Below, piece after piece: positions 45,427 to 51,162 of a stretch of 64,000 bases of DNA. The position numbers and the translations under genes were made by a program. This DNA comes from Guillardia theta CCMP2712 (lineage: Eukaryota > Protista > Cryptophyta): positions 763,023 through 827,022 of the forward strand of contig NW_005434673.1 of NCBI RefSeq assembly GCF_000315625.1, in the 5' to 3' direction. The first letter of the stretch is position 1, and each line of letters begins with the position of its first letter. The notes below the pieces were generated by a model. It had not been told where the DNA came from. It ran no database searches and saw only the letters and a program-made list of their open reading frames with translations.

Positions 45427-46593
45427 AAGCAGAAGCAGAAGCAGAAGCAGGGGATAGGGGAGGGATCAGCATTGACAGCACCATGCAGATCTCTCCTGTC
45501 AAGGATCTTCTGGTGTCCGAGGAGCAGCTGGTGGGGGAGATCGCAGCGCTGCTGGACACAGTGGTCAAGATCACCGTCTCGGCCGAGTCGCTGCACGAGA
45601 TTCACAGCATCGCACTGCAGCTGCAGACGGAGCAGCAGGTGCTGAAGCAGGGAGGAGCTGACCTTGCGTCCCTCCTCCAGCTAGTCTCCTCCTCCATCAC
45701 GGAGCCGCGACTTAACGCGCACCTGAGGAAAGGAGACGGCAAGCTGGCAGGCCACGAGCGCGACGACGTGCTGATCGACACCAACGTGGCGAGGGGCATA
45801 CAGCGACTGACATCGGAGGTCTGCAGGCGAGGAGACGAGGGTGCGGGGAGAGTGATGGGTCATGCGCAGGTCATGACAAAGATGGCGATGTACCGCTCGC
45901 TGCTCCAAGCTCTTGCTCAAGTGAGTCAGAGGAGCGACTCGTCTCATCCCTCTTTCAATATTTCCTTTCTGCTCCTGATCTCGTACTCTCTCCTTATCTC
46001 TAATCCCTCGTCCCCTCTTCCATTGCTAGTCTTCTTCTCTTGTTCTCTCCTCCCTTGTTCTTGTCCTGTCCTCTCTCCTCCACTCGTCCTGTTCTCCTCT
46101 TCCGACCTCGTCTCACGCTTATGTTAGTTGGCTCTCGAGCGAGTGCAGTCGGATCAGCACGAAGACGAGTCGCACGATCAGGTCAGACTCCGTTAGCCTC
46201 TGCTTCCTTTGAGACTCTCCCAGTCCGCGTACGTGCCTGCGTCTCCCGACAAGGAGAGAGGGAGGAGGGAGATGGAAGAGGAGGGAGAGGGAGAGGAGCA
46301 GCAGATGCAAGAGCAGGTGAGGAGGAGAGGAGAGAGAAGCGTCAAAGGCTCTGACGATGAGGCAGCGCAACGCGCATGCTGTCTCGGTGCTCAAGAGGGT
46401 GAGGCAGAAACTGGACGGACGAGACAAGCAGAACGACGGCAACACCAAGTTGACGGTGCAGGAGCAGGCGAGTGATGTGCGACGATGTGTGAAGGTTGTG
46501 AAGGTGAAATGGCAGGTTGAAATGACCATCAAAGAAGCAACAAACATTGACAAGCTCTGCGAGATGTACGAGGGATGGACTCCATGGGTGTGA
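34664..46593 (+). CDS. SMG1: Serine/threonine PIKK kinase SMG1 (nonsense-mediated decay)
   Basis: FKDIIDLLVGW in the HEAT region; IIPQLFARLGH; TKTKPKK..YLLKGREDLHLDERMMQFL; HYAVIPVGPRSGLIQW; GLGDRHLDNIL..HIDWNVCFEKG; LEAFVYDPLVDW; a long post-kinase insertion; FATC end LCEMYEGWTPWV*. One apparent frameshift near 39375. Confidence 0.95.
43243..43301 (+). repeat. (TCC)n microsatellite filling an SMG1 intron
   Basis: Perfect trinucleotide run between the GT donor at 43231 and the AG acceptor near 43327. Confidence 0.9.
45353..45450 (+). repeat. (CAG/CAGAAG)n microsatellite in an SMG1 intron
   Basis: Repeat lies between a GTGAG donor and a CAG acceptor. Confidence 0.9.
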
Positions 46594-46881: not shown

Positions 46882-49037
46882 TCAGAAAGCGACGGCGAAG
46901 GAGAAGGAAATGAAATTCCACGTAAGGAACGTGAAGAGAAGAAACAGCACGGACGCCGCGCTTCGCTTGCACCACTGAAGTATCACAGCGAACAAGCGAA
47001 GGCTCTTTTCCTTCCCCGTCTCCTCGCTCCCCTTCACCATCTCCTCTCTCAGGATCGCGGCCGACCAGCACGCGGCAAGCATGCCATACAGGACATAGAG
47101 AAGAAGCTGTGGAGGCAGCCAGCAGACGCTGAGCAAGAGCTCAGAACGAGAGCCGAATGGGAGAGGACGAACAGACCTGTACTCGAAGACAGAACCAGCT
47201 TCTCCTCCCCCGTCCTCGCTGTGCTCGCCCCCGTTAGACCGCAAGCAGGTTTCCACATGCCGAGCTGCCTCTTCCTGCTCTTCTCAGTCAGGTCCAGCAA
47301 CATCGCCGCGTCGCACCTGGTCGACGCGGATGAGCGCGAAGGAAGGAAAGTAGTTCCCCTGGAGCAAGGACACGGTACCCAGCGTATGCTCAGGCGTGCC
47401 AGTTGAAGGCGATGCAGACTTGTGGGGTCGAGCAGAGCAAGTGGGTTCATCGCTACTCCTGACCAAGAAGGCGAGGAGAGCGTTTCTCATCGCCTCAAGC
47501 ATCTCACTGTGCTCGCCCTCCTCCTCAGCTGCCAGGGAAGCTTCGACTCGCCTCAGCTCCTGGCGGACGAAATCTCCGCCAAGCTCCAAGACTCGCTGCA
47601 TGACCTCCAAGTAGAGGACTTGAGGGAACTTGTGGGGGATTTGAGACAGGATCTGATGGGCTTGTGCCAAGATCCCCTCCTTCCTCTCAGACTCCAAGAA
47701 AGTAGCGGCGAGGCTTCGAAGCTCAGAGGCCGAGCATGTCGGAGGGACATCAGAGGCCTCCCGCACATGAGCGACCGTACAGTGATCATGATCATCGCCG
47801 CTCAGGACCAGGGACGGTCGCACGCTGTCGAGGATCATGCTAGTAACTTGCGGATGCAGCATGGTCTGGTACCTGCTGACATCTCAGATTGCAAGAACCA
47901 ATTAAAGCAAGACAAAGCACTCTAACGTTGATCTTATCAGGAAGTTCATGAAAGGCTTGCGGGGATTTCTCATCCTCCCACAGTCAGAGCTCGTCGCCCT
48001 CCATAGGGGAATGTGTGTCATCAATATACGAGGGCTGCAGAGCCGATGAATGTCCGTCCTCTTCCCTGCTCGACAAGCCTTCCCCTGCAGACGACCCCCG
48101 ACAGCGCTCTCCGCTTGTCTCGCCTCCCCCTCCTCCTCACATTCAACATATCCTTGTTGAGCATTGCGAGCCTCGCTGTCCTTGTATCTCAAGCTCGCGA
48201 CAAACTTGCTGGTCTTGTCTACACAAGAGATCAGGAGCGATGGAAGTCAAGAACATGCGGACCTCGGCGATCCATCAGAGTCCTGTAGATGAACGGGTCC
48301 ACATAGCCCCCCAGCGATGGCGCGTCGATGGTTACAACCTGCGGTCCCTCGCCTTTAAAGTCGCTCGGGGCAGCGAAGAAGCACAACCGTGAAGTTGTCG
48401 AAGAGGAAGGCTGAGTTGAGCGGAAATCTTGATATTCGTCGCTCGAATCTCTCGGCACACGCTGCGCAGAAGCTGTGGCCGATGCCTTGAAGAAATCAGC
48501 CGCTTCACAACATGGAGTACAACGAGAACCGATGTCATGATTCCCCACCGCATGCAGGACTGACGATCCCTTGGGAGGATACAAGATCCTCTCCAGCCTC
48601 TTCAGCCCGGACTCGAAGTCTTCCTCATTGGATCTTGCGGCAAACAAGGTCAGCACCTTGTCACTTGGCACCCAAAATGTACCTATACCCCCCATCCACC
48701 AAATCGCCCAAGAACAGAATGGTTTGTGGCGACAGGCGCCTGACCATGAACCCAACTCTAGCAGCAACTCAGTCAGTCGTCGAGCCATACTCCAGATTAA
48801 GGACCTTGCGATGTATGCATCGCAGATGAACTCCAGCATGGGCAAGACTAGAGGCAGGGAAGCGAAGGAGTAGGATGTCTTGTCGGTAAGTTGGGGGTCG
48901 GCGATCGCTACAATCGTCGAGAACTTGCTGCTCATTCTCGTCCATGAGCAAGTCAGACCACTGACAAGCCAGACCATCGCGTCCAGCCCTATCAGTATCC
49001 CTCCCATCGCCACCGACCATGTCCACCTCCCCGACAT
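46882..49037 (-). CDS. Cdc1/MPPE1-like calcineurin-type metallophosphoesterase (GPI remodelling) with an inserted ERp29C-like domain
   Basis: Motifs IADPQL, LGDLVDGG, VGNHDIG, ILMTHIPLWR, VLSGDDHDHC, EHTLGTVS and CWLPPQLLLY; N- and C-terminal transmembrane helices. Confidence 0.85.
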
Positions 49038-49666: not shown

Positions 49667-51162
49667 ATGTGTAAGTGTGCCAGCTCGACAATCGGTCACA
49701 TGAGCGTGGTGAGCATGGTGCTTGGGCTCGCCTTGCTCATCGCGGGAGTGGTCCCAGCCACCTACAACCCCCCTGCGTGCAAATCCTCGTCTTCGTCATC
49801 ATCGAGCTCGGCATCTGGAAGCTCTTCTTCCTCCAATGCGGGATACAACTCGGGAGATGATTCTGGATACAACTCGGGATACGACAGCGGATACAACTGG
49901 GGCTACAACTATGGTTACAATAAGGGATACGAAACTACGTTCATGTCAACCTACAACGACGGATACAACTATGGGTACAACAAGGGTTACAACAAAGGCT
50001 ACAACGGGTATTCGTACAATAACGCTTACTCCAGTGTGAACAACGGATACTCCTCCTACTCATACACCAGCAGCATGTCTTCGTATTCCTACACCGCAGG
50101 ATACTCCGCAGGACGCAGCCTGAGTGACTTGTCGGGTCATAGCTATGACTACAACAGCGGATACAACTTAGGATACAACTTGGGATACAAAAGCGGATAC
50201 CAGCAGGGAGACTCGTTGAACACATACAGGCTGTCATACAACTCGGGGTACGACTCTGGCTTCAACTCAGGGTACAACACCGGACATAAAACCAACCTCA
50301 ATTACAATTCAGGCTACTGCTCGGGCTACTACAACAGCTACAAAGCACACCAATCGTCAAGCTCGGACTACAATCAAGACTTGACCTCGTCTTACAACAC
50401 AGGTTACAACTCGGGCTACTACAGGGGCTCCTATTCGCATACGTCGAGCTCGTACGGCAGCGGCAGCAGCGGCAGCAGCAGCAGCAGCAGCTCTTCATGG
50501 GACTACTACTCTGAGAGAAGCTGTGAAGACGATCGAAGTGGAGCCAGGGCATGGTTGAAGTATCTAGGGTTATATGGAATCATTCCTGGCCTCTACACTC
50601 TCGTCTTCTCAGGTCTTGGAATTGTGACTAGCCGCAAACGAACGAAGCTATGGGGAGGTCTTCACCTTGCGCAACTGATCAGTGATATCCTCTTGCTTCT
50701 AGCATCAACGTTCGTAACTTTCACTATCGCCCTTGCATCCAAAATAATATGTTGTGAGTACTGTGCCTGCCTTCTGCTGTATTGATTGCATTTGCACTTG
50801 CTAGCCGCATATCACCTTGTTACTTGTCACTGACGGCATCTTTGACCACTGCAGATGACTATGATCTGATCAAGAGCGACAGCTTCTGCTCGATGGCCAC
50901 TGGCAGCGCATGGGCAATCTTTGTATTCAGTCTTCTTTTGTTTATCTCTCAGATCGCCTCGTCTATCGTCATGTGCTCGCTGTGCTGTCAGCCCGACGAG
51001 TGGGTTGAGGTCAATGCGGTTCGGCCTATACACATCGATTATGGAATGCCAATAGCAAAGACCATCGGTGCCGCTCCCAAGCCATCGCAAGGGACCCTGA
51101 GCTCGCTGGTGGATGTTGGACCAGGTTCGAAGCCTGGAGCAGCACGGGGAGCCTGGAGCTAG
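49667..51162 (+). CDS. Four-TM membrane protein with a large Gly-Tyr-Asn-Ser repeat loop
   Basis: TM1, about 250 aa of GY[N/D]x repeats and poly-Ser, then three further hydrophobic helices. One intron near 50755-50854. Confidence 0.7.

What the first reader, a model, noticed from the sequence alone, without database searches (positions are those of the whole stretch)
47431..47742. ERp29C/PDI-D-like helical domain inserted in the Cdc1/MPPE1 catalytic domain, bracketed by a duplicated PTCSA peptide
In Cdc1/MPPE1 proteins the GDDHD(H/Q)C motif is normally followed closely by the EHT strand. Here about 90 aa intervene: ELRSLAATFL..EGILAQA..LYLEVMQRVLELGGDFVRQELRRVEASL..MRNALLAF. This fits the all-helical ERp29 C-terminal domain pattern (Y..VM.K....G..F...E..R....L...N.L..F). 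The insert is flanked on both sides by P-T-C-S-A, encoded CCG ACA TGC TCG GCC and CCC ACT TGC TCT GCT. Identical amino acids with synonymous differences suggest an old insertion-site duplication kept under selection, possibly as a disulfide clamp. I do not know this architecture from other organisms; it could couple ER retention or chaperone binding to GPI-anchor remodelling.
Basis: partly seen in the sequence, partly recalled or inferred. Interest (0 to 1): 0.75.

Follow-up and report, generated by a model that had tools for sequence, protein, structure and literature searches.

The report
ERp29 domain inserted in Cdc1-like enzyme
A GPI-anchor-trimming type enzyme of the alga Guillardia theta carries, in a loop beside its active site, a complete copy of the small helical domain that other ER proteins use to dock onto calnexin/calreticulin, a combination found in no other organism searched.

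Summary
On the minus strand, one open exon (47317-47872) reads GDDHDHC, then about 117 extra residues, then the EHT strand of a Cdc1/Ted1/PGAP5(MPPE1)-type metallophosphoesterase. The gene is Guillardia theta GUITHDRAFT_160449.

- **Domain identity:** the extra stretch scores 34.4 bits on Pfam ERp29 (cut-off 24.3, profile 4-95 of 95). It matches rat ERp29 by phmmer (E 2e-4). It folds as five helices that superpose on the human ERp29 D-domain (Z 14.5, 1.8 Å over 91 residues).
- **Coding signals:** it is in frame and has exon-like codon composition. A 93%-identical metagenome contig keeps it without stops or indels, but constraint is weak (dN/dS about 0.4). No RNA evidence was obtainable.
- **Rarity:** among 1.84 billion representative proteins, only this lineage has the insert. 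Relatives have 8-40 residues at this loop, and a few carry unrelated inserts.
- **PTCSA repeat:** it is real and extends to SD-x-PTCSA. Both copies lie inside inserted material, and the first P-T-C aligns with ERp29's own P-G-C. A duplicated insertion site is therefore not shown, and the disulfide idea is untested.
- **Most likely role:** a luminal docking module, possibly for calnexin/calreticulin. The indispensable Arg223 equivalent is kept, but four other contact residues are changed.

UniProt already auto-labels the domain, and no paper was found. This scan had not found it before on other DNA.

The parts
46882..49037 (-). Whole gene: Cdc1/Ted1/PGAP5(MPPE1)-type membrane metallophosphoesterase, GUITHDRAFT_160449 (GenBank EKX55374.1 = P0039, 639 aa)
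   Evidence: Collinear exon-by-exon matches to a family HMM built without the G. theta rows. Pfam Metallophos 25 bits against a cut-off of 21.5 on P0039. Identity of the database model.
47873..47926 (-). 54-nt GT..AG intron directly upstream of the exon that holds the insert
   Evidence: Joins ...FLIRST to YQTMLHPQ as in P0039. GC is 0.41 against 0.58 in the exon.
47317..47872 (-). Single exon holding the GDDHDHC motif, the inserted domain with both linkers, and the EHT strand
   Evidence: Uninterrupted reading frame. The family HMM matches ORF residues 4-191 at 97.8 bits.
47779..47799 (-). GDDHDHC metal-binding motif of the phosphoesterase
   Evidence: S348, D351, H352 and C355 of P0039 are invariant in the 12-sequence alignment A2; S348, H352 and C355 stay invariant and D351 nearly invariant in the 45-sequence alignment A3.
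47728..47742 (-). First PTCSA (P0039 368-372, Cys370). It aligns one residue off with the P-G-C that opens ERp29 D-domains.
   Evidence: It reads PTCST in relative P0001.
47467..47727 (-). ERp29 C-terminal (D) domain, five helices (P0039 373-459)
   Evidence: PF07749 at 34.4 bits, E 4e-8, profile 4-95 of 95. 1g7d E 2.2e-4. AF2 five helices. 5v8z_A Z 14.5, rmsd 1.8 Å over 91 residues.
47548..47550 (-). Arg codon (P0039 R432) equivalent to human ERp29 Arg223, the residue indispensable for binding the calnexin/calreticulin P-domain
   Evidence: phmmer alignment to 5v8z_A, read against PMC7687155. Conserved in P0001.
47431..47445 (-). Second PTCSA (P0039 467-471, Cys469), in the Ser/Pro-rich linker after the last helix and outside the ERp29 profile
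   Evidence: Identical in P0001.
47329..47391 (-). EHTLGTVSLLQGNYFPSFALI strand block of the phosphoesterase, which resumes after the insert
   Evidence: E485, T487 and G496 of P0039 are invariant in the 12-sequence alignment A2; E485 stays invariant and T487 and G496 nearly invariant in A3. Second matched stretch in 37 homologues.

Best explanation
Shown: the stretch is a genuine, in-frame ERp29-type D-domain of five helices. With its two Cys-containing linkers it has been inserted into the surface loop that follows the metal-binding GDDHDHC motif of a Cdc1/Ted1/PGAP5-family metallophosphoesterase of Guillardia theta. The host enzyme keeps every residue that is invariant in the 12-homologue alignment A2, so it looks catalytically competent. 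By family knowledge its catalytic domain faces the ER/Golgi lumen, which is also where D-domains work.

Inferred: the insert acts as a luminal protein-docking module displayed next to the active site. [quoted passage not shown] That would hold the GPI ethanolamine-phosphate phosphodiesterase at the lectin-chaperone scaffold, or in the ER. Removal of the side-chain EtNP, the step that licenses ER exit of GPI proteins, would then be coupled to glycoprotein folding control.

The two linker cysteines may staple the base of the inserted domain; this is untested.
For: - **Domain identity:** PF07749 at 34.4 bits against a cut-off of 24.3, full-length match. phmmer to rat and human ERp29 D-domains. 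MAFFT alignment with G. theta and Hanusia ERp29 gives 27-30% identity and 23 invariant columns. The AF2 model superposes on 5v8z_A at Z 14.5 and 1.8 Å over 91 residues, with all ERp29/Wind chains at Z 6-14.5 and unrelated chains at 4.8 or below. The ESM Atlas nearest clusters are all ERp29-C.
- **Coding status:** same frame as both catalytic flanks. GC by codon position is 0.63/0.41/0.68, like neighbouring exon parts, against an intron GC of 0.41. The chance of no stop in 104 codons is 0.019. The gene's five introns located by coordinate are 44-54 nt, against 312 nt for the insert. No GT..AG pair removes it in frame. The GenBank model includes it. The relative L007 keeps it open without indels, with dN/dS 0.40.
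- **Host enzyme intact:** every column invariant in the 12-homologue alignment A2 is, by definition, also matched in G. theta, and all exons are collinear with the family HMM.
- **Loop tolerance:** this loop accepts insertions in other lineages, such as Acanthamoeba.
- **Docking function:** the ERp29 D-domain binds calnexin/calreticulin P-domain tips, with Arg223 indispensable (PMC7687155). The AtPDI11 D-domain binds CRT1/2, and the Dictyostelium PDI D-region gives ER retention (PMC8836223). The insert keeps the equivalents of Arg223, K208 (as Arg) and L241.
- **Partner present:** G. theta has two calreticulin-family genes whose P-domain tips keep the Asp-Gly.
- **Pathway link:** calnexin is already tied to GPI remodelling in mammals (bioRxiv 10.1101/2020.07.08.192955).
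Against: - There is no transcript evidence, and no transcript-derived protein of this gene was in the collections.
- The insert evolves far faster than the catalytic flanks (6.1% against 1% nucleotide differences) and nearly as fast as nearby non-coding DNA (8.5%), so constraint is weak.
- Four of seven P-domain contact positions are changed (K204E, R226A, L227S, K237E), and L227E abolishes binding in human ERp29.
- The K208-equivalent Arg is Gln in the relative.
- The insert is net acidic, whereas known P-domain sites are basic.
- G. theta P-domain tips read (E/S)DG rather than MDG.
- The domain-only AF2 model used an alignment holding three true ERp29 rows, which may bias it. The full-length model, made without them, also gives five helices, but at pLDDT 44-86.
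- The subfamily (Cdc1, Ted1 or PGAP5) and the enzyme's substrate are inferred from family names only.
Confidence: 0.6

Rival explanations
1. The D-domain is a real, expressed insert that does not bind calnexin/calreticulin. It acts as a lid or substrate-selecting cap over the adjacent active site, or as an ER-retention or client-binding module of another kind.
For: The insertion point lies directly after the metal-binding GDDHDHC motif. Four of seven P-domain contact residues are changed and the surface is acidic. The D-region of Dictyostelium PDI gives ER retention (PMC8836223). Other lineages carry unrelated inserts in this same loop.
Against: The one residue called indispensable for P-domain binding is kept in both sequences. 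Calreticulin binding by D-domains has been shown in both animals and plants.
Confidence: 0.25
2. The insert is a tolerated passenger: a lineage-specific domain capture in a permissive loop, translated but without function and slowly decaying.
For: It is restricted to G. theta and one 93%-identical relative among 1.84 billion representatives. Divergence is 6.1% in the insert, 1% in the catalytic flanks and 8.5% in nearby non-coding DNA. dN/dS is only about 0.4, from 19 changes. BLASTP finds no alignment to the genome's own ERp29.
Against: It still scores over the Pfam cut-off along the full domain length. It has no stop or indel in either lineage. The hydrophobic core signature (Y, M, G, F, N, L, F) and both linker cysteines are conserved. 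Synonymous saturation between the two PTCSA copies, with identical residues, implies long selection on the linkers.
Confidence: 0.12
3. The stretch is not part of the mature protein. It is spliced out, is an alternative cassette, or the locus is a non-expressed pseudogene mis-modelled by the gene caller.
For: No transcript-derived protein was found. The same GenBank model appears to read through two short introns elsewhere, so it is not reliable in detail.
Against: An over-threshold Pfam domain lies in the same frame as both flanking catalytic motifs. Codon-position composition is exon-like. No GT..AG pair excises it in frame. The introns of this gene located by coordinate are 44-54 nt. The host gene keeps all residues invariant in alignment A2.
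Confidence: 0.08

Closest known systems
ERp29 / Drosophila Wind (ERp29_N thioredoxin-like domain followed by a C-terminal D-domain)
   Same: The insert has the five-helix D-domain: Pfam PF07749 over cut-off, Z 14.5 to human ERp29 D-domain 5v8z_A, and Z 11-13 to Wind. It keeps the Arg223 equivalent and a P-x-C at the domain start. It is luminal by inference.
   Different: Here the domain is internal, inside a loop of a membrane phosphoesterase. It is not at the C-terminus of a soluble thioredoxin-fold protein. It has no ERp29_N domain, no dimerisation module and no C-terminal retrieval signal. Several P-domain contact residues are changed. G. theta also has a separate, ordinary ERp29 gene (93.9 bits).
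PDI-D / PDI-S proteins (a-a'-D: Arabidopsis PDI11, Dictyostelium Dd-PDI)
   Same: A D-domain is appended to a catalytic ER enzyme as an interaction or retention module. The AtPDI11 D-domain binds calreticulin 1 and 2 (PMC8836223).
   Different: In those proteins the partner is a thiol-disulfide oxidoreductase and the D-domain is terminal. Here the partner is a metallophosphoesterase and the D-domain is an insertion.
PGAP5 (MPPE1) / yeast Cdc1 and Ted1, GPI ethanolamine-phosphate phosphodiesterases
   Same: All family motifs are present and collinear: ADPQLxD, GDLxDGG, GNHD, HxPLxR...CG, SGDDHDxC, EHTxGT...QGNxxPSF. Hits are named 'ethanolamine phosphate phosphodiesterase' and 'uncharacterized protein C630.12'. 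Predicted terminal membrane helices are present.
   Different: There are 129 residues between the Cys of GDDHDxC and EHT, against 8-40 elsewhere. The subfamily was not resolved and activity is untested. A second G. theta family member (L002) has the normal short loop, with an intron just after GDDHDHC.
Family members with other inserts in the same loop (Acanthamoeba castellanii ELR12690.1 = P0005, and environmental P0016, P0023, P0031)
   Same: Insertions of 81-94 residues sit at the same place, which shows the loop tolerates extra material.
   Different: Those inserts have no Pfam match and no similarity to ERp29.

Membership tests
ERp29 C-terminal (D) domain, Pfam PF07749 | Profile score over the curated gathering cut-off across the full domain | tested here: met
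   34.4 bits (E 4e-8) against a cut-off of 24.3, profile positions 4-95 of 95. 29.8 bits in the context of the full database protein. 33.9 bits in the six-frame genome search.
ERp29 C-terminal (D) domain, Pfam PF07749 | Five-helix fold superposable on solved D-domains | tested here: met
   AF2 gives five helices at pLDDT 76. 5v8z_A Z 14.5, rmsd 1.8 Å, 91 of 97 residues; 2qc7 Z 12.8; Wind Z 11-12.6; the best unrelated chain is Z 4.8. Caveat: three of the five alignment rows were true ERp29 sequences. The full-length model made without them also has five helices, at lower confidence.
ERp29 C-terminal (D) domain, Pfam PF07749 | Residues that contact the calnexin/calreticulin P-domain (human K204, K208, R223, R226, L227, K237, L241) | tested here: inconclusive
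   By the phmmer alignment to 5v8z_A and the residue list in PMC7687155: R223 stays R, K208 becomes R and L241 stays L. K204 becomes E, R226 becomes A, L227 becomes S and K237 becomes E.
ERp29 / PDI-D protein family (whole-protein architecture) | D-domain at the C-terminus of a thioredoxin-fold ER protein | tested here: not met
   The domain is internal to a metallophosphoesterase, and no thioredoxin or ERp29_N domain is present in P0039. So the gene is not a member of the ERp29/PDI-D protein family; only the domain is shared.
Cdc1/Ted1/PGAP5(MPPE1) metallophosphoesterases | Calcineurin-like phosphoesterase domain with its metal-binding motifs | tested here: met
   PF00149 at 25 bits against a cut-off of 21.5. 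In alignment A2, D47, D96, H295, D351 and H352 are invariant and N134-H135 nearly invariant, and all are present in G. theta.
Cdc1/Ted1/PGAP5(MPPE1) metallophosphoesterases | Family-specific motifs in order (ADPQLxD, GDLxDGG, GNHD, HxPLxR..CG, SGDDHDxC, EHTxGT..QGNxxPSF, CxLPxQ) | tested here: met
   Alignment A2. Collinear exon-by-exon matches of a family HMM built without the G. theta rows. 37 homologues match both flanks of the insert.
Cdc1/Ted1/PGAP5(MPPE1) metallophosphoesterases | Membrane protein with a luminal catalytic domain | tested here: inconclusive
   AF2 predicts an N-terminal helix at 4-29 and C-terminal helices at 565-638. No topology predictor was available, so the luminal orientation is taken from knowledge of the family.
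Cdc1/Ted1/PGAP5(MPPE1) metallophosphoesterases | Removal of side-chain ethanolamine phosphate from GPI mannose | not testable with these tools
   This needs an enzyme assay or complementation. The function is cited for PGAP5 from bioRxiv 10.1101/2020.07.08.192955.
Target-site duplication flanking an inserted segment | Flanking direct repeats derived from the host sequence at the insertion point | tested here: inconclusive
   The repeat (A/S)SD-x-PTCSA is real and occurs in 0.06% of shuffles. However, relatives have no such motif in the loop and have only about 4 residues where both copies lie. The first copy aligns with ERp29's own P-G-C. DNA identity is 11/15, and the Ser codons belong to different families (TCT and AGC).

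The most novel reading that the evidence does not exclude
The inserted D-domain physically tethers a GPI ethanolamine-phosphate phosphodiesterase to the P-domain arm of calnexin/calreticulin. In this alga the lipid-anchor remodelling step that licenses ER exit would then be hard-wired to the N-glycan folding checkpoint. This would be a natural 'Rosetta-stone' fusion for a coupling that in mammals is known only as a looser calnexin-PGAP1 association. The two linker cysteines would form a disulfide staple at the base of the domain.
Probability: 0.3. Interest if true: 0.7.

Novelty: new variant of a known kind. Interest (0 to 1): 0.5.

Why it matters
Both parts are well-known ER modules, but the combination is new: a chaperone-docking D-domain displayed from a loop beside the active site of a GPI-remodelling type phosphoesterase.

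If the insert binds calnexin/calreticulin, it would be a natural fusion arguing that GPI-anchor maturation and glycoprotein folding control are physically coupled. That idea currently rests on mammalian knockout and co-precipitation work. It would also offer a compact system to test the coupling.

It is also a clean example of a whole domain captured into a permissive catalytic-domain loop, flanked by near-identical Cys-containing linkers.

Three limits apply. Only one lineage has it, constraint on it is weak, and expression is unproven.

Tried and rejected
- **BLASTP of the insert against the genome's own ERp29 ORF:** no alignment. The similarity shows only with profiles and MAFFT, so a recent copy of the resident ERp29 gene is rejected.
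- **DNA-level direct repeats in the gene:** only short, chance-like pairs, and the PTCSA repeat is not seen as DNA.
- **Insert as an intron:** candidate GT and AG sites near the repeats give a frameshift and a stop. I checked this by eye.
- **Word searches:** with the 192-aa exon, with the database protein and with the resident ERp29 ORF. These gave one close relative, no second fusion and too few ERp29 sequences for a deep alignment.
- **Metagenome scan:** one relative, without the insert.
- **Organism names for the nearest insert-less homologues:** P0002 comes from GCA_049309645.1 and P0004 from SRR14578326/7. They could not be resolved, so the insertion cannot be dated beyond 'before the split from the P0001 organism'.
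- **Literature:** searches for the locus tag and accessions gave no paper.
- **Cys-Cys distance:** model coordinates are not exposed, so it was not measured.
- **BLASTP of the 33-aa corrected middle exon against homologues:** nothing. Only the family HMM gave a weak match.
- Full-length work used the database model P0039 as returned, although it seems to retain two introns. The corrected joined model was left out.
Full report
**What is there.** The window belongs to an 87.1-Mb, 669-contig assembly. The locus encodes GenBank EKX55374.1 / XP_005842354.1, hypothetical protein GUITHDRAFT_160449 of Guillardia theta CCMP2712 (P0039, 639 aa).

The gene lies on the minus strand from the ATG at 49037 to the stop at 46882-46884. 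It is split by short GT..AG introns. The five I located by coordinate are 44-54 nt, and one more of about 42 nt follows the insert exon. A profile HMM built from 43 homologues, with the G. theta and near-identical rows left out, matches the three minus-strand frames in collinear order:

| Window coordinates | Bits |
|---|---|
| 48986-48753 | 45.7 |
| 48750-48682 | 18.8 |
| 48632-48468 | 17.6 |
| 48486-48376 | 6.3 |
| 48060-47959 | 30.8 |
| 47874-47311 | 97.8 |
| 47148-47008 | 16.0 |

The protein has the motifs of the Cdc1/Ted1/PGAP5(MPPE1) metallophosphoesterases: ADPQLxD, GDLxDGG, GNHD, HxPLxR..CG, SGDDHDxC and EHTxGT..QGNxxPSF. Every column that is invariant in the 12-sequence alignment A2 is, by definition, also matched in G. 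theta. Pfam Metallophos is over its cut-off. Sources name its relatives 'ethanolamine phosphate phosphodiesterase' and 'uncharacterized protein C630.12'.

**The observation.** One uninterrupted exon (47317-47872) reads GDDHDHC, then TVAHVREASDVP, PTCSA, about 94 residues, PTCSA, RPHKSASPSTGTP, and then EHTLGT.

The Cys-to-EHT distance is 129 residues here and in one close relative. In the other family members fetched it is 8-40 residues (mode 12). The exceptions are a few lineages with unrelated 81-94-residue inserts, for example Acanthamoeba castellanii ELR12690.1. The family HMM covers ORF residues 4-191 with 73 profile positions.

**What the insert is.** Four lines of evidence agree that it is an ERp29 D-domain.
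- **Pfam.** ERp29 C-terminal domain (PF07749) matches at 34.4 bits (E 4e-8; cut-off 24.3) over profile positions 4-95 of 95.
- **Solved structures.** phmmer against the Protein Data Bank finds only ERp29 D-domains (rat 1g7d E 2.2e-4; human 5v8z and 2qc7).
- **Alignment.** MAFFT aligns it at 27-30% identity with the resident ERp29 of G. theta and Hanusia phi, with 23 invariant columns that include the Y..M....G..F...E..R...N.L..F signature.
- **Predicted fold.** AlphaFold2 on the 127-residue piece gives five helices (pLDDT 76). Foldseek's first 13 matches are all ERp29 or Wind. The structural re-alignment gives Z 14.5, rmsd 1.8 Å and 91 of 97 residues to 5v8z_A; the eight ERp29/Wind rows score Z 6-14.5, seven of them 11 or more, and the best unrelated chain scores 4.8.

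One caveat applies to the fold: three of the five alignment rows were true ERp29 sequences. The full-length model, whose alignment had none, still predicts five helices at the same places, at pLDDT 44-86. The protein-language-model look-up also lands on ERp29-C clusters (a lead only).

The genome has just two PF07749 matches, this one and an ordinary ERp29 gene on another contig (93.9 bits). BLASTP finds no alignment between the two, so the insert is an old, diverged copy, not a recent one.

**Is it translated?** The evidence is indirect but consistent.
- The domain is in the same frame as both catalytic flanks.
- GC by codon position (0.63/0.41/0.68) is like the flanking exon parts, and the neighbouring intron has GC 0.41.
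- Only 1.9% of mononucleotide shuffles are stop-free over 104 codons, and the other two sense-strand frames have 2 and 7 stops.
- The GT and AG sites near the repeats would shift the frame into a stop.
- The GenBank model includes the insert.
- An independent 913-nt metagenome contig (L007, ENA ERZ930071), genomic because it carries the same intron, has the same arrangement. It is 93% identical in protein, with no stop or indel.

Constraint is weak, however. Nucleotide differences between the window and L007 are as follows:

| Segment | Differences | Rate |
|---|---|---|
| Catalytic flanks | 2/214 | 1% |
| Insert | 19/312 | 6.1% |
| Linker codons 31-40 | 5/30 | 17% |
| Downstream, mostly non-coding | 14/165 | 8.5% |

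dN/dS in the insert is about 0.40, from 8 synonymous and 11 non-synonymous changes. No transcript-derived protein of this gene was found, so RNA evidence is still needed.

**How rare is it?** phmmer of the 192-aa exon against 1.84 billion representative proteins gave 38 hits. Only P0001, the L007 product, covers the insert. The other 37 match the two flanks. A word search with the full database protein gave 15 family members, none with the insert. A metagenome scan gave one relative without it. No nearest Atlas cluster combines Metallophos and ERp29. The second G. theta family member (L002) has a 9-residue loop, with an intron one codon after the Cys of GDDHDHC.

UniRef already names the protein 'ERp29 C-terminal domain-containing protein', so automated annotation has seen the domain. 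No paper mentions the locus. The scan's earlier notes hold nothing on it.

**The PTCSA repeat.**
- A bracketing 5-mer repeat arose in 0.06% of shuffles.
- It is not visible as a DNA repeat.
- The two Ser codons before the Asp come from different codon families (TCT and AGC). The identity is therefore kept at the protein level.
- In the relative, the first copy reads PTCST and the second is unchanged. Both cysteines are kept.

Two results weaken the 'duplicated insertion site' idea. First, relatives have only about four residues between C-x-V-x-H and G-x-V-x-EHT, and none has this motif, so both copies lie within inserted material. Second, the first P-T-C aligns, one residue off, with the P-G-C that opens the D-domain in G. 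theta, Hanusia and human ERp29 (Cys157; profile position 2). This holds in both the sequence and the structural alignment.

The first copy may therefore have come with the donor domain, and the second may be a later internal duplicate. A disulfide staple is sterically conceivable: the second Cys is 11 residues past the last helix and the first Cys lies in the first turn of helix 1. Both linkers are below pLDDT 50, and the coordinates could not be read, so this remains untested.

**Likely mechanism.** The published molecular function of D-domains is docking.
- Human ERp29 binds the MDG tip of calnexin, calreticulin and calmegin P-domains through its last two helices. Arg223 is indispensable, K204, K208, R226 and K237 contribute, and L227E and L241K abolish binding (PMC7687155).
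- The Arabidopsis PDI11 D-domain binds CRT1/2, and the D-region of Dictyostelium PDI gives ER retention (PMC8836223).

By the alignment, the insert keeps the Arg223 equivalent (P0039 R432, also kept in the relative), K208 as Arg (Gln in the relative) and L241. It has E, A, S and E at the K204, R226, L227 and K237 positions and is net acidic.

G. theta has two calreticulin-family genes. Their P-domain tips read EEDGDWE and ESDGEWE. The Asp-Gly is kept, but the Met is not.

PGAP5 removes the side-chain ethanolamine phosphate that must go before GPI proteins bind p24 receptors and leave the ER. Calnexin is already linked to GPI remodelling through PGAP1 in mammalian cells (bioRxiv 10.1101/2020.07.08.192955).

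My best reading is that the insert is a luminal docking module beside the active site, perhaps for calnexin/calreticulin. The rivals are a lid or other-partner role, a tolerated passenger, and a stretch that is not in the mature protein.

Exons were searched by reference, and the full-length work used the database model P0039 as returned.
- That model appears to read through two short introns (48529-48486 and 48384-48339). Residues 138-188 of the AlphaFold model are accordingly disordered.
- The corrected joined model, the Cys-Cys distance, the topology, the enzyme subfamily and the taxa of the nearest insert-less homologues remain open.

**Verdict.** The duplication and disulfide ideas remain unproven. 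This is a new variant of known kinds, seen in a single lineage, and of moderate interest.

Noticed in passing
window 48529-48486 and 48384-48339 (minus strand); middle exon window:48385-48483:-: GenBank model EKX55374.1 seems to read through two short introns (44 and 46 nt, together 90 nt, so the frame is restored). This replaces the conserved block after GNHDIG (IGHSF..ERFERR..PLNSAFLFDNFTV) with about 50 out-of-frame residues. The family HMM weakly matches the other frame (E 0.0067), and AF2 pLDDT is below 50 at residues 138-188.
   Followed up: partly
window 46357-46593 (+): This ORF ends in a FATC domain (PF02260, 45.8 bits). It is the last exon of a PI3K-related kinase gene, which converges tail-to-tail on the Cdc1-like gene.
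   Followed up: partly
window 49667-50785 (+): A 372-aa ORF made of Ser runs and GYN/SGYN repeats, with hydrophobic ends. Its only Pfam match is a weak Yae1_N hit. The function is unknown.
   Followed up: no
L002 (G000:C3:647184-650270), about 1540-1700: A second Cdc1/Ted1/PGAP5-type gene of G. theta. It reads GDDHDHC, then a phase-2 intron of about 75 nt, then AEGHKEATEITVGTFSW. The loop is short and has no insert, and the intron sits one codon after the Cys.
   Followed up: partly
L011-L018 (G000:C97 about 92.8-94.3 kb; G000:C111 about 24.6-25.2 kb): The two calreticulin-family genes of G. theta have P-domain tips EEDGDWE and ESDGEWE, that is (E/S)DG. A review calls the MDG motif absolutely conserved.
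   Followed up: partly
window 47150-47938 against L007: Divergence from the metagenome relative is strongly uneven: 1% in the catalytic exon flanks, 6% in the insert, 17% in the ten linker codons before it and 8.5% downstream. This could mean weak constraint or a locally divergent haplotype.
   Followed up: partly
P0039 residues 254-258/440-444 and 443-447/525-529: Two further exact 5-mer repeats, EEEGE and GEHSE, link the acidic loop of the insert to other parts of the protein. GEHSE is 14/15 identical at DNA level (my own comparison of the two stretches as read). Both are low-complexity and probably arose by chance.
   Followed up: partly
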